This document shows positions 7,063-32,007 of a stretch of 64,000 nucleotides of DNA, piece after piece. Positions within the stretch are counted from its first letter, which is position 1, and every line of letters starts with the position of its first letter. The stretch spans positions 1 through 64,000 of IMG/VR virus record IMGVR_UViG_3300020608_000013; one strand, given 5' to 3'. The notes below the pieces were generated by a model that was not told where the DNA came from, did no database searches, and saw only the letters and a list, made by a program, of their open reading frames with translations. The translations under genes and the position numbers were made by a program.

Positions 7063-7398
7063 ATGGCAGATAATTCTGTCAAGGTTAAATTTATGCCGTA
7101 TCTTAAGATATTTTTAAAGTTCGTTAATTACATTTCGCCTAAACGCCCACATGAAAGTAAAGTTGGGCATTTTTTACGTACCTCCTTCTTAGGGGCGTGT
7201 ATGGTACTAGCAGTTCGTACTATCCCACTATCCAGCGAAGTAATTGAGTTGGAAAAGGAAAACGCTCGAATAAACCACTTGTGTCTAGATAAAGTGATGG
7301 AAAGTAATAAAAACTACACGCCCACCTTGTATGGCGAACATCTATTACGCGAGGCAGAAGAATCAGGGTTAAGTGATTCCAACGATAATAAAGAGTAG
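7063..7398 (+). CDS. small single-TM protein (possible spanin-like/lysis accessory)
   Basis: Hydrophobic segment FLRTSFLGACMVLAV followed by coiled-coil-like EVIELEKENARIN. Function is inferred only. Confidence 0.5.
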   Translation: MADNSVKVKFMPYLKIFLKFVNYISPKRPHESKVGHFLRTSFLGACMVLAVRTIPLSSEVIELEKENARINHLCLDKVMESNKNYTPTLYGEHLLREAEESGLSDSNDNKE

Positions 7399-8832
7399 TT
7401 GACCATGTACATTGTTTTTTATATAGACTTCTATGCTGAGAATACTGGTTATGTTGGTGTAGGTTATCATGGGTATCTCGGAGGTGTTCAGGATAATCTT
7501 AAGAAGATCACTGACGAGACCTCTTACGGATACCTACCAAAGAAGGCAAGAGGTGCTTATGATGCTGTTAATGTAAATGTTTTAAAGTATATAAATGTGC
7601 TTAAATCATTACCCGTTAAAGAGGGGAGTAGTAAGAATGATATTACTGTGATGGGATTTACTTGGCTGATTGATTATATAAAAGAAATATCGTCTATCGA
7701 CCAACAATTTACGCAAGCGACATTACTCTACAACGACCCTGCAATTGATAACAGAGTGCTAAAATTAGGACTAAAGGATAAAATCAATACAGTCTTAACT
7801 AACTGTAAAGTTTTAATAAGCTCTATTTATGAAGCTGAAAATATTTCAGAGAAAGGTAGTTTCAGGACTAAACCACTTGCTTACATTGCGTTTAGAAAAT
7901 CACTCACTGATGGCACGATTACTGAAGTGAAGCTTATCGATAAGAAAGACTTCTCAAAAAAACCTAAATTAAACCCACTTATAAATAGCACTTATCTGTG
8001 GATTAGTGTACTTTACGACACAAACACTTATTGCTTTGCCAATGGGTATGAAGATATTAATGATATGGGTTTATTGTCTAACCTTGTAGGGTTTAATATT
8101 GTCGTACTTAACGACCCCGACCCTTATTTAGAACGCTTGTTAAGTGCTTTAAGAACCTTTAGAAATGGCGCGACATACCCTATCACTGGCTCGCTCCCTA
8201 TGTTTTTCAAAGCTGATGTCCTTAATATGCTGAGTGAGTACAACGATGTCTTTTACCCTAAATTAGCTTTAGACGGAGGTCAAATACTCTACTATGGAGA
8301 TCGTGCGACACCGCTGTTAAAGGAAAATACTAATCCTCGGTATACGGCACTTTGTAACGAAATGTATGAACCGATGTATTATTCACTAACACATAATGTT
8401 GTTTTTGCAGATACTGATGAAGTAGCGACCTTCTTAGAGAGTGGTGTATTACCGAATACACCTACATCAAAAACAGACTTAACAGAAACGTTCTACGACA
8501 CCACGTTCACAAAACAAAATAAAGTGAAGAAGACTTTGCGAAAAGATGTCTCGACCTCCCTAAAGAAGTCGAGACATCGGTTGACAACAGTTGAATTGCC
8601 TAATGGCGCAAAGAAAACCATCCATGTTTGGCTATTATATGGTCTAAATTTCCCGTTACGAAATACGTTAAAGGCGATTGAAAAACTAGACCCTGTTGTT
8701 TATATACAATACCGTATCATCGATGGTAATTTCCTCCGCTATCAAGCTATTGTAGAAACAACTCAAGGGAGAAGTATATGGTCTAGACACCATATAGATC
8801 ATGTGTTAATCGATATTGAAAATAACAAATAG
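7399..8832 (+). CDS. RNase H-fold protein (phiKZ gp155-like), catalytic motif partly degenerate
   Basis: N-terminal FYIDF...GVGYHGY, T.YGY and YNDP align with the RNase HI-like N-domain, followed by a long phage-specific C-domain. ATG at 7405 is an alternative start. Confidence 0.65.
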   Translation: MTMYIVFYIDFYAENTGYVGVGYHGYLGGVQDNLKKITDETSYGYLPKKARGAYDAVNVNVLKYINVLKSLPVKEGSSKNDITVMGFTWLIDYIKEISSIDQQFTQATLLYNDPAIDNRVLKLGLKDKINTVLTNCKVLISSIYEAENISEKGSFRTKPLAYIAFRKSLTDGTITEVKLIDKKDFSKKPKLNPLINSTYLWISVLYDTNTYCFANGYEDINDMGLLSNLVGFNIVVLNDPDPYLERLLSALRTFRNGATYPITGSLPMFFKADVLNMLSEYNDVFYPKLALDGGQILYYGDRATPLLKENTNPRYTALCNEMYEPMYYSLTHNVVFADTDEVATFLESGVLPNTPTSKTDLTETFYDTTFTKQNKVKKTLRKDVSTSLKKSRHRLTTVELPNGAKKTIHVWLLYGLNFPLRNTLKAIEKLDPVVYIQYRIIDGNFLRYQAIVETTQGRSIWSRHHIDHVLIDIENNK

Positions 8833-9168
8833 GATTTCCAACACACCTTTATAAAGCATCGTAGGGTCATCCATATTTAAAATAGAAAGAACTAATGCCA
8901 GACCAATGAAAATTAGAGGTAGCGTAATTAAAATTAACCCAATCAACTTACGATGGTAAAATTCTAAGTCTACCTCTGCCTTTCGACGGTACGTCTCAAG
9001 TGACTCTTCGATGCGTAAACTATCTTTGTTAATAACACCATCTCTCAAGTCCAATAGAATGGTCTCCTTTTCCTCGTCTGTCAACTCTTCTAGTAGCGCA
9101 TCAATAGCTAATACTTGCTCCTTACTTAAGCTTTTTAACCGTAGCGTCACTTCTTCATTAAGAGCCAT
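8806..9168 (-). CDS. membrane protein with two C-terminal TM helices (holin-like candidate)
   Basis: Charged N-domain followed by LIGLILITLPLIFIGLALVLSIL and MLYKGVLEILFVIF. GAGGT SD lies upstream of ATG 9168. Confidence 0.6.
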   Translation of the reverse strand: MALNEEVTLRLKSLSKEQVLAIDALLEELTDEEKETILLDLRDGVINKDSLRIEESLETYRRKAEVDLEFYHRKLIGLILITLPLIFIGLALVLSILNMDDPTMLYKGVLEILFVIFNID

Positions 9169-9182
9169 GTTAAACACCTCTG

Positions 9183-10166
9183 TTATTGAAATGGTAAGGT
9201 AAGCACATCCCCCACTTGTATTGTATTAATACTCTTTAAGCGATCAGCGTTTAATTCATAAATTTTCACTACGAAACGTTTATCACCGTAGAGTTTCATG
9301 CTCACTTTCTCTAGAGTGTCGCCTGCCTTTACAATATAAGTCTGGCGCGTACTCTCCCTATCAAGGGATATATCCTGTAATAGATGTCGACTATACCGCA
9401 TATACTCCCCACTTATCCTTACTAATTCCTCCCTATATTTATCATATATTACCCTATTTATCAACAACTTTCTAGATGTTTCTTGTTTCTTAAGAAGCGT
9501 TGTGAAAAATAATGGTTGGTCTGTAGCCTGACTACCCATATTAACGGGCGCATTTAACACTAGGTACATGACTGAAATTAAAGTTAGTGCTAGAATTAGT
9601 GTCACGTAAACAGTGTATATAGGACCTTGTTCGTAAAATAAAGGTACAGGTCCTTTATTCTTAAGACTCAAGCGGTAGTGTTTTAAATGGCCGTTGCGGT
9701 AACTATTATACCCTTTACCTGTAAAAGGGTAGTATAAATCGTCATAAACATCACTCATACCCCGATCGTTATAATAATGTTGTCTAGTCACTTTTCCTAA
9801 AAACTCATAGCTTCTCAAACCAACAAACGCTGATAATTTACCTTTGCTTAAATGTTGTACTAGTTCGGGGTTATTACAACAATCTTTATAAACCTTATTT
9901 TTCTCTAGCGTTTTTTTATGACGCATCTCACGTCGTTTATTTATAAGTTTCATCCGCTCTGCGCCAGTTGAACTCGCTATATCTTTATCTAACGAATCCA
10001 TAACAGATTCTGAAAGGGTTTTGCGGTAGTTATACCCTCTTCGCAATCGAGCGTCTTCTTTAACTAAATCAGGGTCTTCTTGACCTGTAACATAAACAAG
10101 CTCATCGTTGTAATCGCCAGCGCGACGGTGATGGTGTTTCATTGGGTTTTTTTTGTACGTATTCAT
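9183..10166 (-). CDS. membrane-anchored LysM (peptidoglycan-binding) protein
   Basis: TM segment VYVTLILALTLISVMYLVL. C-terminal YIVKAGDTLEKVSMKLYG...IYELN...INTIQVGDVLTLP is a canonical LysM domain. Confidence 0.85.
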   Translation of the reverse strand: MNTYKKNPMKHHHRRAGDYNDELVYVTGQEDPDLVKEDARLRRGYNYRKTLSESVMDSLDKDIASSTGAERMKLINKRREMRHKKTLEKNKVYKDCCNNPELVQHLSKGKLSAFVGLRSYEFLGKVTRQHYYNDRGMSDVYDDLYYPFTGKGYNSYRNGHLKHYRLSLKNKGPVPLFYEQGPIYTVYVTLILALTLISVMYLVLNAPVNMGSQATDQPLFFTTLLKKQETSRKLLINRVIYDKYREELVRISGEYMRYSRHLLQDISLDRESTRQTYIVKAGDTLEKVSMKLYGDKRFVVKIYELNADRLKSINTIQVGDVLTLPFQ

Positions 10167-10170
10167 GAGA

Positions 10171-10719
10171 CTAACCTCTATGGTATCTTTTAAAAGTATG
10201 TGTAAAGGCGATGGCTATAGCGTCTACCTCATCGTTGGTTTCTACATTCGATATGTCGACCAATTCAGACAACTGTCGATTAGCCAACATACCCTTCTTC
10301 ACTTTTTCCTTGGCGTTGCCTTCGTATTTATGAGTATTGAAAAACGATTTAATCGTGGTTGGGTAATACTTGTGTAGTACCATACGATCAAACCTACGAA
10401 AAAGCGCCGATTCTAAGAAGTTGACTTGCGCCATTAAAGGTGGGTAAGCGCTCTGATTACCCTGATTGCTAATATAAGGGTGTTCGGTAGCAACTTCATT
10501 AGGTTTTACGTGATGGATGATGCCTAGTAGAATCTCTGCATAAACAATACACTTTTGTAAATTAGGGTTGAGTGAACGATAGTCTTGTAACTCGCCGTTT
10601 GTTAATTTAATATTACCGTATTTAATGTTGGTAAATGTTTGTTTTGTTATGTCGTAATCAACGACACTATAACCCAGAGAATTAGTCCCTGGGTCTATAC
10701 CTACTGTACGTAAATTCAT
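10171..10719 (-). CDS. ruvC: RuvC-like Holliday junction resolvase
   Basis: TVGIDPGTNSLGYSVV, VATEHPY and DEVDAIAIA give the catalytic D/E/D/D pattern. Confidence 0.9.
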   Translation of the reverse strand: MNLRTVGIDPGTNSLGYSVVDYDITKQTFTNIKYGNIKLTNGELQDYRSLNPNLQKCIVYAEILLGIIHHVKPNEVATEHPYISNQGNQSAYPPLMAQVNFLESALFRRFDRMVLHKYYPTTIKSFFNTHKYEGNAKEKVKKGMLANRQLSELVDISNVETNDEVDAIAIAFTHTFKRYHRG

Positions 10720-11586
10720 TTAATCGCTAGTGTAGTCGTAAATTGGATTATCTGCTGCGCTATCGACAGTGTATTTAAAACCACCGTTTAACGAAGGTAA
10801 GTGGTAAATACAGTTAGTGAAACTCATACTCTGCGCGTGGGCTATTTCTTGGTAACGTGACATTACGCCATTGATAGATTTTTGTGCAGTGAATTCAACA
10901 CCTGAACAAATTGCAACTTCACTAATAATGGAGTAAGTCTCGTCGCCGTAGAGCGTTATGATTGAGTTATTCAGCTCCTCAACCGTCTTAGCAGCTACAT
11001 CGGCTTCTTGTGTGTAGCGTGTAATATAAGCTTCGTTAATAGGGTAAACAGCTTCATTAAACACCGTCGCTTGATTATTAGTAACAGTGTCTTGTAATGT
11101 AGGTTCGTAAACCTCTAGACCGTCAAGACGATCCTTATCAGGCATACCTTTTAAGATGGTAGGCGGATGAACTTCATCAAGTAGCTTACACCAATAAAGT
11201 TCACACATAACGCCGTCAATCTCTTGCTCTGTACGTAGACGTAAGGTTGACCGTTCTTCAGAAGTCAATGGTTGGTCAAGAGGGCGAATGACAAACGGTA
11301 CCGCTCGGTTGAGTATTGGTTGGTTACGTTTAAACTCTACAGGCATGTTACGTTGTAAATCGTTACTACCTAGTGTAATTTTATGACCTCCAATACCTAC
11401 CATATAGTAAGTACTAGCAGGGTATTTTGTAGTCTCAAAGTCTTCTGGGATCGGGATTGAAAGTTTCTCATTCAGCGTGGAGTGTAGATGAGGTATAAAG
11501 GGTTTTCCTGAATCGATAATAGCGTGTAAGTAATCATTCCATATTGTGTTAGTAACGTCACTCAGTAGTGTTGCAGAATTAGACAT
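10720..11586 (-). CDS. virion structural/baseplate protein (phiKZ gp139-like)
   Basis: STLNEKL, YYMVGIGGH, VPFVIRPLDQPL..EER..LRLR and IISEVAICSG are motifs of this conserved family. Confidence 0.7.
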   Translation of the reverse strand: MSNSATLLSDVTNTIWNDYLHAIIDSGKPFIPHLHSTLNEKLSIPIPEDFETTKYPASTYYMVGIGGHKITLGSNDLQRNMPVEFKRNQPILNRAVPFVIRPLDQPLTSEERSTLRLRTEQEIDGVMCELYWCKLLDEVHPPTILKGMPDKDRLDGLEVYEPTLQDTVTNNQATVFNEAVYPINEAYITRYTQEADVAAKTVEELNNSIITLYGDETYSIISEVAICSGVEFTAQKSINGVMSRYQEIAHAQSMSFTNCIYHLPSLNGGFKYTVDSAADNPIYDYTSD

Positions 11587-30613: not shown

Positions 30614-30886
30614 TCAGTATATCAAGACATTGAGGAGAGCCTCAATTAAAAATCTTGCAATTAGGTCGAAAACGACCTCTAACAAAAATTTCGTGCGATG
30701 ACCCTCAGCCTTTTCTACTAGGGCTTTGGTTAACTTCTTCGCATAACGCGTAAGAATTTTTTTGAAGGCTCTTTTGAATAAGACCCTTATTATTACTTTT
30801 AAAAGTAATAATAATAGTTCGGTTAAAGAACTTGGACGAAGCTCGTCTAGGTTAGAAGCTACGTCTGTGATAATATCTGCAAACAT
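30614..30886 (-). CDS. small hydrophobic/amphipathic basic protein
   Basis: 90 aa with an AGAGGT SD. Contains LTELLLLLLKVIIRVLFKRAFKKIL. Confidence 0.6.
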   Translation of the reverse strand: MFADIITDVASNLDELRPSSLTELLLLLLKVIIRVLFKRAFKKILTRYAKKLTKALVEKAEGHRTKFLLEVVFDLIARFLIEALLNVLIY

Positions 30887-30943: not shown

Positions 30944-31639
30944 TCAATCTAAAATAGCACTTTTCTCCGTAGTACAGACAAGTTCTTTAATGTCTTCAAT
31001 ATGTAACCGCAACTCACGTTCTAGAACGCTCCTTACTGTCTCGATGGGTTTAGTGCAGTCTAAATGCACACATTTATCCCAACCTAGTAGACTACAGTTT
31101 TCATAAAAACGTTGGTAATTTTTAACCAACGTTTCTTTGAAGGTACGGTTCTCTTTATCGAAAGTTTTTAAGTTTGTACGTGTACTTTCGCGCTCTAACA
31201 TAGTATCTACATCAATATCACAATAGACATATAAGACGGGTGGTTTGATGAACGATTTATAGTGTGATAAAATCAAGTCCATTGGCGGCATACCGTTCGA
31301 CTCACTATTAATCGACTGGTACGCGAAGAAAGAAGCGATACCCCTGTCAGTGATTGCTATACGATCGTCTTCACGGAGGTTCGGTATTGCGATTGCGTTA
31401 GTGTAGAAGTTAGCTGCGTAAACCGCCATCTTAAGCGCCTCTTTCGACTGAGGTGTACCAGCACGTTTACTTTCTTCATAGATTTCTGTAATGTGGTTAG
31501 CAGCCTCACCTAATTGTGTGCGCTTATAGGACTTAATCTCGTGATCCTTATACAGTGTTTCAATGATTGTTGGTATAACGACACTTGTCTTGCCACTGAA
31601 GTCAGGTCCGTCTACGACGATTAATGGTTGGTATTTCAT
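30944..31639 (-). CDS. tmk: thymidylate (dTMP) kinase
   Basis: P-loop IVVDGPDFSGKTS, AITDRGIASFFAYQ and lid region R..R...FD.E. Confidence 0.9.
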   Translation of the reverse strand: MKYQPLIVVDGPDFSGKTSVVIPTIIETLYKDHEIKSYKRTQLGEAANHITEIYEESKRAGTPQSKEALKMAVYAANFYTNAIAIPNLREDDRIAITDRGIASFFAYQSINSESNGMPPMDLILSHYKSFIKPPVLYVYCDIDVDTMLERESTRTNLKTFDKENRTFKETLVKNYQRFYENCSLLGWDKCVHLDCTKPIETVRSVLERELRLHIEDIKELVCTTEKSAILD

Positions 31640-32007
31640 AACGTTACTCCATAACTAATCATGGCGAAAATGATCCCGACGCTGGCTACGGTTAACGCTA
31701 TTTTCAAACTAAGGTAATTTAATAACGCATAGCGAAACCCATCTCTGTTAATTTGGTCGTAGGATAACGAACGTGTTAAAGATGACTGAATTGCTTGCTC
31801 GTCTGCTTCAGGGTAATCGTAAATGTATAGAGTAATGACTTTAAGAATCCCGACAGATAATAGTATTAAACCAACATTTAGTAACAATCTAAAAACAGCT
31901 TCATAAATGGGGTATAGCTCATGGATTAACGCATAACCCGCACAGCCCGCAAGTCCTAAACCCGTAAGGAAAAAGACAATGGTAAGAAAATTTGAATATT
32001 GCATCAT
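31636..32007 (-). CDS. membrane protein, 3 predicted TM segments
   Basis: Three hydrophobic stretches in 123 aa. The stop overlaps the tmk start. Confidence 0.65.
   Translation of the reverse strand: MMQYSNFLTIVFFLTGLGLAGCAGYALIHELYPIYEAVFRLLLNVGLILLSVGILKVITLYIYDYPEADEQAIQSSLTRSLSYDQINRDGFRYALLNYLSLKIALTVASVGIIFAMISYGVTL

What the first reader, a model, noticed from the sequence alone, without database searches (positions are those of the whole stretch)
7063..10166. Membrane module: TM+LysM protein plus two small TM proteins between RuvC and the RNase H-like gene
Seen: a 327-aa protein with a basic ~180-aa N-domain, one TM helix and a C-terminal LysM domain but no lytic catalytic domain, co-oriented with a 2-TM protein; a third single-TM protein precedes the RNase H-like gene. 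Established: LysM binds peptidoglycan. From memory, phiKZ has the endolysin gp144, vRNAP gp149 and UvsX gp152 in this interval, and they are absent here. Inference: a trans-envelope tether linking a cytoplasmic structure (assembling heads, early vesicle or nucleus) to the cell wall, or a lysis-timing/superinfection-exclusion system.
Basis: partly seen in the sequence, partly recalled or inferred. Interest (0 to 1): 0.65.

Follow-up and report, generated by a model that had tools for sequence, protein, structure and literature searches.

The report
Orphan LysM membrane protein beside holin-like gene
In a divergent phiKZ-like jumbo phage from marine or vent biofilms, the slot after RuvC that holds the lysis genes in phiKZ holds only a holin-shaped membrane protein and a relative-less membrane protein with a wall-binding LysM domain, probably a new variant of lysis-timing control.

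Summary
The main observation holds. Window 9183-10166(-) encodes a 327-aa protein with three parts: a basic 180-aa N-domain, one strong transmembrane helix, and a C-terminal LysM domain that scores above Pfam's cut-off. No catalytic domain was detectable. Two details were wrong or weak. The "2-TM" neighbour (8806-9168(-), 120 aa) has one transmembrane helix plus a short hydrophobic tail. The helix in the "third TM protein" (7063-7398(+)) is sub-threshold and may not be translated.

Synteny explains the locus. In phiKZ, gp139-gp140(RuvC) is followed by i-spanin, o-spanin, the class IIIB holin gp142, regulator gp143 and endolysin gp144 (PMC12894885). All 11 chimalliviruses surveyed have a small N-in membrane protein 1-4 genes downstream of RuvC. 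Here RuvC, ORF327 and ORF123 are packed 4 and 14 nt apart. ORF123 copies gp142's architecture but shows no sequence similarity to it.

ORF327 residues 1-270 have no relative among 1.84 billion representative proteins. LysM is absent from 10 other chimallivirus genomes. The genome has no detectable spanins, gp143 homologue or standalone gp144-type endolysin.

Best reading (about 0.45): a reduced lysis-control module, in which ORF123 is the holin and ORF327 is a wall-anchored holin partner or regulator. This is inferred from position and topology only. I rate it a new variant of a known kind, of moderate interest.

The parts
9183..10166 (-). ORF327: bitopic membrane protein, predicted N-in/C-out. 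It has a basic cytoplasmic N-domain, one TMD, a periplasmic stalk and a C-terminal LysM domain. ATG at 10166 lies 4 nt after the RuvC stop and is preceded by AGAGG.
   Evidence: the only relative of residues 1-270 in 1.84e9 representatives is the protein itself
9621..10166 (-). ORF327 N-domain, residues 1-182. It is basic (net +12) with a His-rich N-terminus and a Tyr/Gly/Asn/Arg-rich stretch at about residues 125-182 (9 Tyr in 58 residues). It has no family match and is predicted cytoplasmic.
   Evidence: (only a helical hairpin at about residues 50-90 modelled with confidence)
9552..9620 (-). ORF327 transmembrane helix, residues about 183-205.
   Evidence: Kyte-Doolittle 19-residue mean 2.5. 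There are 5 K/R within 25 residues on the N side and none within 21 residues on the C side.
9339..9551 (-). ORF327 periplasmic linker or stalk, residues 206-276. By eye it looks largely helical and charged. The low-confidence AF2 model showed only a short helix here.
   Evidence: sequence inspection; AF2 single-sequence model uninformative
9192..9338 (-). LysM peptidoglycan-binding domain, residues 277-325. It is the only LysM in the 212-kb genome.
8806..9168 (-). ORF123 (120 aa from the ATG at 9168; AGAGGTG lies 7 nt upstream). It has an acidic soluble N-domain of about 70 aa (net -9), one strong TMD and a 19-22-aa tail. This is class IIIB holin-like architecture. The 3' end overlaps the convergent RNase H-like gene by 27 nt.
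   Evidence: no sequence relatives
8878..8946 (-). ORF123 transmembrane helix (residues 78-100 in the 123-aa numbering). It is the strongest hydrophobic segment among the small proteins of the genome.
   Evidence: KD 2.88
7063..7398 (+). ORF111: small ORF upstream of, and co-oriented with, the RNase H-like gene, in the position of phiKZ gp156.1/gp156. Its hydrophobic segment is sub-threshold and its start codon is uncertain. Function unknown; probably not part of the module.
7399..8832 (+). RNase H-like ribonuclease gene (phiKZ gp155 class), convergent with the module. Its likely start is the ATG at 7405.
   Evidence: phrog_3265 E 8.5e-19
10171..10719 (-). RuvC-like resolvase (phiKZ gp140 orthologue), immediately upstream of ORF327 on the same strand.
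   Evidence: PF02075 E 5.2e-7; tblastn to gp140 E 2e-11
10720..11586 (-). DUF7208 virion protein (phiKZ gp139 orthologue). It anchors the synteny.
   Evidence: PF23838 E 4.2e-42; tblastn to gp139 E 5e-14

Best explanation
ORF327 and ORF123 are what remains of, or replaces, the phiKZ-type lysis cassette that follows RuvC in this phage lineage.

ORF123 is the holin. It is a class IIIB-like, N-in/C-out, single-TMD protein with an acidic cytoplasmic domain of about 70 aa. I expect it to accumulate in the inner membrane and trigger lethal hole formation at a set time.

ORF327 is a holin partner in the same membrane with the same topology. Its basic cytoplasmic domain (net +12) would take the role that the soluble regulator gp143 plays on the holin's acidic N-domain in phiKZ. 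Its periplasmic LysM would fix it to peptidoglycan. Holin triggering could then be tuned, delayed or localised according to the state of the wall.

What is shown: the domain architecture, the predicted topology, the tight operon-like packing with RuvC, the synteny, and the orphan status of both proteins. What is inferred: holin function, any ORF327-ORF123 interaction, peptidoglycan binding, and the direction of regulation.
For: 1. Synteny. phiKZ has gp139, gp140(RuvC), i-spanin gp141, o-spanin gp141.1, holin gp142, regulator gp143 and endolysin gp144 in that order. All five cassette genes were shown experimentally to act in lysis (PMC12894885). The window has the gp139 and gp140 orthologues, followed directly by ORF327 and ORF123.
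2. Survey. In all 11 chimalliviruses examined, a small membrane protein lies 1-4 genes downstream of RuvC on the same strand. It has a 39-108-aa soluble N-domain, 1-2 TMDs and a 20-34-aa tail. The set covers five Pseudomonas phages plus Ralstonia, Shewanella, Vibrio, Serratia, Salmonella and Erwinia phages.
3. Architecture. ORF123 has an N-domain of about 70 aa with net charge -9, one TMD and a 19-aa tail. The phiKZ gp142 group has N-domains of 74-80 aa, one TMD and tails of 27-34 aa.
4. Rarity. Only about 5 small membrane-protein candidates, plus ORF327, exist among some 220 genes in the genome, so two directly after RuvC is unlikely by chance.
5. Packing. The gaps are 4 nt and 14 nt, and both genes have GAGG-type Shine-Dalgarno sequences.
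6. Charge. The two cytoplasmic domains carry opposite net charges, +12 and -9.
7. Missing partners. No gp143, gp141 or o-spanin homologue, and no lipobox candidate, occurs anywhere in the genome. The classical partners are therefore absent and ORF327 occupies their slot.
8. Evolution. The pair evolves fast, as lysis genes typically do. ORF327 shows 5 nonsynonymous to 1 synonymous SNPs among environmental variants, against 7 to 13 in RuvC plus RNase H (Fisher p = 0.065).
Against: - No sequence or profile similarity links ORF123 to gp142 or to any other post-RuvC membrane protein. Those lineage-specific families do not detect each other either.
- The genome has other small membrane proteins that could be the holin: a 4-TM 123-aa protein and a 90-aa amphipathic cationic protein flanking thymidylate kinase at 30.6-32.0 kb. 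In the Serratia and Salmonella phages, tmk sits between RuvC and the holin-like gene.
- No endolysin is adjacent. The only candidate, a weak one, lies about 55 kb away.
- The complex prediction gave no answer.
- The best LysM match is the YgaU/Kbp type. From my own knowledge, that protein is cytoplasmic in E. coli, so peptidoglycan binding is not guaranteed.
- Expression timing is unknown.
Confidence: 0.45

Rival explanations
1. The roles are reversed or doubled. ORF327 itself forms the lethal membrane lesion, as a large class III-like holin with both cytoplasmic and periplasmic domains. ORF123 is then its antiholin or co-holin.
For: ORF327 has class III topology: one TMD, N-in and C-out. It has a sizeable periplasmic domain, as T4 holin T does, and a large cytoplasmic one, as gp142 does. 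Holin-antiholin pairs are usually adjacent.
Against: At 327 aa it would be unusually large for a holin. ORF123 matches the proven phiKZ holin architecture far better. No sequence match to any holin family was found.
Confidence: 0.15
2. ORF327 is a superinfection-exclusion or injection-blocking protein. As an inner-membrane protein coating the peptidoglycan from the periplasmic side, it would hinder wall penetration or DNA entry by later phages. This is functionally like T4 Sp or Imm.
For: It is a bitopic membrane protein with a periplasmic wall-binding domain. It is a fast-evolving orphan. This phage's own virion carries a transglycosylase domain for entry, the kind of activity such a protein would counter.
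Against: It is packed in an operon-like cluster behind late or structural genes and RuvC, in the slot used for lysis genes across the group. The large basic cytoplasmic domain has no role in this model.
Confidence: 0.12
3. ORF327 is a trans-envelope tether. The basic N-domain would bind DNA or a cytoplasmic phage structure, such as a replication compartment, vesicle or proheads. It would be fixed through the membrane to the wall, comparable to the membrane anchors of phi29 DNA replication.
For: The N-domain is strongly basic and has a Tyr/Arg/Gly-rich segment that may be disordered. The neighbouring genes RuvC and the RNase H-like gene act on DNA.
Against: Neither chimallin nor PhuZ is detectable in this genome. 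There is no nucleic-acid-binding or other domain match. Synteny points to lysis. In phiKZ the same neighbours, RuvC and RNase H, simply bracket unrelated genes.
Confidence: 0.12
4. ORF327 is a spanin substitute. It would be an i-spanin-derived protein whose outer-membrane partner was lost and replaced by a wall anchor, acting in the last step of envelope disruption.
For: It occupies exactly the i-spanin/o-spanin slot between RuvC and the holin. Its C-terminal half (TMD, charged stalk, then a C-terminal binding module) resembles an i-spanin in outline. No spanin candidates were found anywhere in the genome.
Against: Binding peptidoglycan gives no route to outer-membrane fusion once the wall is degraded. 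i-spanins have an N-terminal TMD, not a 180-aa cytoplasmic domain. There is no similarity to i-spanin profiles.
Confidence: 0.06

Closest known systems
phiKZ gp142, the class IIIB holin, and its cassette gp141/141.1/142/143/144 (Manohar et al. 2026, PMC12894885)
   Same: ORF123 lies downstream of the gp139-gp140(RuvC) orthologues on the same strand. It has one N-in/C-out TMD, an acidic cytoplasmic N-domain of about 70-80 aa and a short periplasmic tail, in a protein of 120-143 aa.
   Different: No detectable sequence or profile similarity. No spanins, no gp143 and no adjacent endolysin are present. A 327-aa LysM membrane protein stands in the spanin slot instead.
phiKZ gp143, the soluble cytoplasmic lysis regulator that binds the holin's N-domain
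   Same: The ORF327 N-domain has a similar size (about 180 aa against 177 aa), is predicted cytoplasmic and is encoded next to the holin-like gene.
   Different: There is no similarity to phrog_2935 or to a gp143 profile. gp143 proteins are acidic (net -6 to -10) and soluble. The ORF327 domain is basic (+12) and membrane-anchored.
T4 holin T with antiholins RI (periplasmic) and RIII (cytoplasmic): lysis inhibition
   Same: Class III topology, with holin control exerted on both sides of the membrane. ORF327 has domains on both sides (PMC12894885).
   Different: No sequence relationship. T4 uses separate proteins and has no wall-binding module. Whether this phage shows lysis inhibition is unknown.
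Rz-type i-spanins
   Same: The gene slot between RuvC and the holin, an N-in/C-out membrane anchor, and a charged periplasmic stalk.
   Different: The TMD is internal, after 180 aa, rather than N-terminal. There is no o-spanin partner, and the C-terminus is a LysM domain.
Bacterial bitopic wall-binding proteins with a cytoplasmic N-domain, one TMD and a periplasmic peptidoglycan-binding domain (FtsN/DamX with SPOR, ExeA/GspA with PG_binding_1, FimV with LysM); comparison from my own knowledge
   Same: The overall logic of a membrane-spanning protein fixed to peptidoglycan by a small C-terminal or periplasmic binding domain.
   Different: No homology outside LysM. These are host division, secretion or pilus proteins, not phage lysis-locus genes.

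Membership tests
LysM domain (Pfam PF01476), ORF327 C-terminus | Match to the family profile above the curated cut-off over the full domain | tested here: met
   26.4 bits against a cut-off of 20.9, profile positions 1-43 of 43. Six-frame search: 29.7 bits, E 1.5e-7. NCBIfam E 5.5e-8.
LysM domain (Pfam PF01476), ORF327 C-terminus | Located in the compartment that contains peptidoglycan, and binds it | tested here: inconclusive
   The positive-inside rule and the lack of a signal peptide predict C-out. No dedicated topology predictor or binding assay was available.
Class IIIB holin (phiKZ gp142 type), ORF123 | Single TMD, N-in/C-out, with a large cytoplasmic N-domain and a small periplasmic tail | tested here: met
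   N-domain of about 70 aa, TMD with KD 2.88, tail of 19 aa. 5 K/R on the N flank against 1 on the C flank.
Class IIIB holin (phiKZ gp142 type), ORF123 | Sequence or profile homology to gp142 (phrog_14484) | tested here: not met
   No PHROG hit. tblastn in both directions negative. hhalign probability below 1%.
Class IIIB holin (phiKZ gp142 type), ORF123 | Encoded in the lysis cassette downstream of RuvC, together with spanins, regulator and endolysin | tested here: inconclusive
   The position after RuvC is met. The cassette partners are absent from the locus and undetectable in the genome.
Class IIIB holin (phiKZ gp142 type), ORF123 | Timed lethality, premature triggering by an uncoupler, and release of a soluble endolysin | not testable with these tools
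   Needs expression and complementation assays as in PMC12894885.
Endolysin, ORF327 | A muralytic catalytic domain | tested here: not met
   Only the LysM part matches endolysin families. Residues 1-270 match nothing in Pfam, NCBIfam, PDB sequences or 1.84e9 proteins. The N-domain is predicted on the cytoplasmic side.
i-spanin (Rz-like), ORF327 | An N-terminal TMD, with a cognate o-spanin lipoprotein gene embedded, overlapping or immediately downstream | tested here: not met
   The TMD lies at residues 183-205. No lipobox ORF occurs in any frame of the locus or genome. There is no profile similarity.
gp143-type lysis regulator (phrog_2935), ORF327 N-domain | Homology to the gp143 family; a soluble cytoplasmic protein | tested here: not met
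   No PHROG hit. hhalign probability 0.1%. The domain is membrane-anchored and of opposite charge.
Chimalliviridae (nucleus-forming phages), the genome | Encodes chimallin | tested here: not met
   No tblastn hit with phiKZ gp54 and no PF25677 match at E<=0.1. The Pfam model is Phikzvirus-specific, so a very divergent chimallin is not excluded. Other phiKZ core genes are present: gp50, gp55, gp139, gp140, gp152 and gp157.

The most novel reading that the evidence does not exclude
ORF327 is a new kind of two-sided antiholin or lysis-timing sensor. It would be a single polypeptide combining a cytoplasmic holin-binding domain (the role of gp143 or T4 RIII) with a periplasmic, peptidoglycan-anchored sensor (the role of T4 RI). 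Wall damage, from superinfecting virions or from the phage's own exported transglycosylase, would feed directly into triggering of a class IIIB holin in a jumbo phage that lacks spanins.
Probability: 0.15. Interest if true: 0.75.

Novelty: new variant of a known kind. Interest (0 to 1): 0.5.

Why it matters
The phiKZ lysis cassette was defined only in 2026, and its class IIIB holin is regulated through a large cytoplasmic domain. How widespread and how variable that system is remains open.

This locus shows a lineage in which the conserved post-RuvC lysis slot has lost spanins, regulator and endolysin. In their place it has gained an orphan membrane protein that reaches from the cytoplasm to the cell wall.

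If ORF327 does regulate the holin, it would link lysis timing to peptidoglycan through one protein. That would give a simple system for studying how lysis inhibition signals cross the membrane. It would also add to the set of Gram-negative-type phages that lyse without recognisable spanins.

If ORF327 is unrelated to lysis, it is still a relative-less phage protein with a clear topology and a testable wall-binding module.

Tried and rejected
Searches for relatives of ORF327:
- tblastn against 50,697 phage records found only short LysM matches in unrelated phages.
- A pattern scan of IMG/VR found none.
- The word-index search of 5.8e9 proteins found only the protein itself plus three unrelated secreted LysM proteins.
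- Full HMMER of residues 1-270 against 1.84e9 representatives found only the protein itself.
- The ESM Atlas feature search gave nothing usable.
- PDB sequence search returned only a weak glucansucrase match (E 0.05), read as noise.
- PADLOC returned PycTM at E 0.048, read as noise from the TMD.

Searches for relatives of ORF123:
- tblastn against phages found none even at E 10.
- The word search found only the protein itself.
- Atlas hits were below meaningful scores.
- Eleven chimallivirus genomes gave nothing at E<=10.
- HMM and hhalign comparisons against gp142-type and enterobacterial-type post-RuvC proteins were not significant. These two control families do not recognise each other either.
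- By eye I saw a shared short motif in the N-domains (hydrophobic, L, acidic, basic, IL, D) and a K-G-h-h-E tail motif. No statistic supports either, so I do not claim homology.

Structure and complex prediction:
- AlphaFold2 single-sequence models of ORF327 (pLDDT 38.5) and of the candidate endolysin (pLDDT 41.5) were too poor for fold searches.
- Complex prediction with ORF327 residues 1-215 and ORF123 returned 'no answer'. It is evidence neither for nor against binding.

Finding closer relatives of the phage:
- The gp139 homologue found none in IMG/VR.
- The 8-sequence alignment was too divergent for the locus finder.

Endolysin hunt in the genome:
- Phage_lysozyme, Amidase_2 and PG_binding_1 are absent.
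- SLT occurs only inside the 2566-aa virion protein.
- Peptidase_M15_4 gave only a weak sub-threshold stretch in the same protein.
- A gp144-family HMM does not significantly detect the candidate at 64.8-65.7 kb (E 3.3).

Rejected readings:
- ORF327 as an endolysin. It has no catalytic domain, and the N-domain is on the wrong side of the membrane.
- ORF327 with an embedded o-spanin. No lipobox occurs in any frame.
- ORF327 as an assembly or frameshift artefact. It is intact and indel-free in four other runs.


Full report
**What the window is.** The window is the first 64 kb of a 212,020-bp viral contig with direct terminal repeats, at about 38% GC. It encodes homologues of the following phiKZ core genes:
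- gp139 (DUF7208), gp140 (RuvC) and gp157;
- a gp155-class ribonuclease;
- gp152, non-virion RNA polymerase gp55 and DNA polymerase gp50;
- a giant virion protein carrying a gp144/gp181-type transglycosylase domain.

All identities to known phages are below 32%. There is no nucleotide-level match in 50,697 phage records. Chimallin and PhuZ were not detectable. The same sequence, more than 99% identical, occurs in biofilm, marine, hot-spring and hydrothermal-vent metagenomes from three studies. The host is unknown. I assume a diderm host because all known relatives infect Proteobacteria, but this is not shown.

**The observation.**
- Residues 1-182 are basic: pI 9.55, net charge +12. The N-terminus is His-rich, and residues 125-182 are Tyr/Gly/Asn/Arg-rich.
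- Residues 183-205 form one strong hydrophobic helix.
- Residues 206-276 form a charged stretch that looks helical by eye.
- Residues 277-325 are a full-length LysM domain above Pfam's cut-off.

There are five K/R within 25 residues before the helix and none within 21 residues after it. A 180-aa basic N-domain without a signal peptide cannot be exported. The predicted topology is therefore N-in/C-out, with LysM in the periplasm. No catalytic domain is detectable.

The neighbour is not a 2-TM protein. From its likely ATG at 9168 it is 120 aa. It has an acidic N-domain of about 70 aa (net -9), one very hydrophobic TMD and a 19-22-aa tail.

The hydrophobic segment of ORF111 (7063-7398, plus strand) is below threshold and contains two Arg. 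The annotated start lacks a ribosome-binding site, while an internal ATG has one. Its membrane character is doubtful.

**Synteny.** In phiKZ the order is:
- gp139, then gp140 (RuvC);
- gp141 (i-spanin) and gp141.1 (o-spanin);
- gp142 (holin), gp143 (regulator) and gp144 (endolysin);
- then gp145-gp154, followed by RNase H gp155.

Manohar et al. (PMC12894885) showed the following for gp141-gp144:
- The five genes together are a lysis cassette.
- gp142 is a 'class IIIB' holin: one N-in/C-out TMD, a large cytoplasmic N-domain and a small periplasmic part.
- The soluble protein gp143 tunes gp142 through that N-domain.

I examined the region downstream of RuvC in ten further phages:
- Pseudomonas phages 201phi2-1, PhiPA3, Noxifer and phiHQ;
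- Ralstonia phage FLC1-1B;
- Shewanella phage FishSpeaker;
- Vibrio phage pVp-JHP1101;
- Serratia phage PCH45;
- Salmonella phage SPLA10;
- Erwinia phage Huxley.

In every one, a small membrane protein lies one to four genes after RuvC on the same strand. It has a soluble N-domain of 39-108 aa, one or two TMDs and a 20-34-aa tail. It is often accompanied by an i-spanin/o-spanin pair, nearby or convergent.

In the window, RuvC is followed after 4 nt by ORF327 and after a further 14 nt by ORF123. Both have GAGG-type ribosome-binding sites. The cluster ends by overlapping the convergent RNase H-like gene. The interval that holds 15 genes in phiKZ thus holds two genes here. One of them copies the holin's architecture almost exactly.

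**What cannot be shown.** Holins evolve fast. gp142 detects only Pseudomonas-phage relatives, and the Ralstonia protein detects only Ralstonia-phage relatives. The lineage-specific proteins fall in different PHROGs or in none. Profiles of the Pseudomonas and enterobacterial groups do not detect each other. ORF123 likewise matches none of them. Its holin assignment therefore rests on position and topology only.

The genome contains only about five small membrane-protein candidates, plus ORF327, among some 220 genes. That makes the placement non-trivial, but two alternatives exist: a 4-TM protein and a 90-aa cationic amphipathic protein flanking thymidylate kinase at 30.6-32.0 kb. This matters because tmk lies between RuvC and the holin-like gene in PCH45 and SPLA10.

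**ORF327 is an orphan in an informative slot.**
- Residues 1-270 have no relative among 1.84 billion representative proteins other than the protein itself.
- LysM occurs nowhere else in this genome.
- LysM is absent from ten other chimallivirus genomes.
- ORF327 is not similar to gp143 regulators or to i-spanins.
- No lipobox-bearing ORF that could be an o-spanin exists in any frame of the genome, and there is no gp141 or gp143 homologue.
- No standalone endolysin of six common families was found.
- The only endolysin candidate is a 321-aa protein at genome 64762-65727 (minus strand). It has a signal-peptide-like N-terminus, weak lysozyme-clan hits and transglycosylase-like motifs. If it really is exported independently of the holin, restraining lysis until the right time becomes a periplasmic problem. 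A wall-anchored regulator would fit that situation. This last step is speculation.

**Mechanism proposed.** ORF123 is the holin. ORF327 is a co-resident inner-membrane partner. Its basic cytoplasmic domain would act on the holin's acidic N-domain, the role of gp143 in phiKZ. Its LysM would anchor it to peptidoglycan. Triggering would then be timed, restrained or localised according to wall state.

Support comes from the slot, the operon-like packing, the shared topology, the opposite charges (+12 and -9) and the absence of the usual partners.

Among environmental variants, ORF327 carries 5 nonsynonymous and 1 synonymous change. RuvC plus RNase H carry 7 and 13 (p = 0.065). This is compatible with a fast-evolving lysis or host-interface gene, but the counts are too small to weigh.

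The interaction itself is untested. The complex prediction gave no answer, and both single-sequence structure models were poor.

**Rivals.** Four alternatives remain open:
- ORF327 is itself the holin.
- It acts in superinfection exclusion.
- It is a spanin substitute.

Each is laid out with evidence and refutation tests in the Rival explanations section. The tether idea lacks any specific support, and chimallin and PhuZ were not even detectable.

**Verdict.** The locus is best read as a reduced, re-equipped phiKZ-type lysis-control module containing a relative-less LysM membrane protein. Confidence is about 0.45 for the module reading, about 0.6 that ORF123 is a holin, and about 0.15 for the specific wall-sensing antiholin idea. 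I rate it a new variant of a known kind, with interest 0.5.

Noticed in passing
window 30614-30886 (-), 30944-31639 (-), 31636-32007 (-): A thymidylate kinase gene (PF02223, E 1.7e-10) is flanked by two small proteins. Upstream is a 123-aa protein with 3-4 hydrophobic helices. Downstream is a 90-aa protein with a strongly cationic amphipathic centre. In Serratia PCH45 and Salmonella SPLA10, tmk lies between RuvC and the holin-like gene. These two proteins are therefore alternative holin or outer-membrane-disruptor candidates.
   Followed up: partly
outside the window: genome 64762-65727 (-), = L018:762-1727: A 321-aa orphan has an internal Met followed by a signal-peptide-like segment. It carries E-S, G-P-F-Q-I and H-N-L-G-P-G motifs resembling lytic transglycosylases. 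It has only sub-threshold hits (Pfam Destabilase E 0.0038; phrog_4067 transglycosylase E 0.027). It is a possible exported endolysin. The AF2 model was too poor to confirm the fold.
   Followed up: partly
outside the window: genome 131415-139115 (+): A 2566-aa protein carries the genome's only clear SLT/gp144-like transglycosylase domain (43% identity to the phiKZ gp144 catalytic part; PF01464 E 6.7e-14). A weak Peptidase_M15_4-like stretch lies just downstream. It is presumably the gp181-type virion entry lysin.
   Followed up: partly
L002:10185-10897 (phiKZ gp156 and gp156.1, next to RNase H gp155): phiKZ gp156.1 is a small membrane protein with a coiled-coil-like C-terminus. gp156 begins with a lipobox-like L-I-S-G-C. 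The pair looks like a second spanin-like pair, in the position that ORF111 occupies in the window. It is not mentioned in the lysis-cassette paper sections I read.
   Followed up: no
whole genome G000: No chimallin (tblastn with phiKZ gp54; PF25677) and no PhuZ were detectable, although many phiKZ core genes are present. Either they are very divergent or this lineage does not build a phiKZ-type nucleus.
   Followed up: partly
outside the window: genome about 190000-199000 (-): About ten co-oriented genes of 245-300 aa lie in a run. Several look like paralogues by eye, sharing a V-E-V-L-F..G..F-N-E-L type motif. The run is interrupted by a 177-aa protein with a signal peptide and a very basic C-terminus (194788-195321).
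   Followed up: no
There are no indels. Single-base differences are mostly synonymous in the RNase H-like gene and RuvC (7 nonsynonymous, 13 synonymous). In ORF327 they are mostly nonsynonymous (5 against 1).
   Followed up: yes
L014 (201phi2-1 gp226-gp228): The record notes that the 201phi2-1 counterparts of the i-spanin, holin and regulator were all detected in virions by mass spectrometry. The phiKZ and PhiPA3 homologues are annotated 'virion structural protein' although they are lysis proteins. This annotation trap propagates through PHROGs (phrog_14484 and phrog_2935 are filed under 'head and packaging').
   Followed up: no
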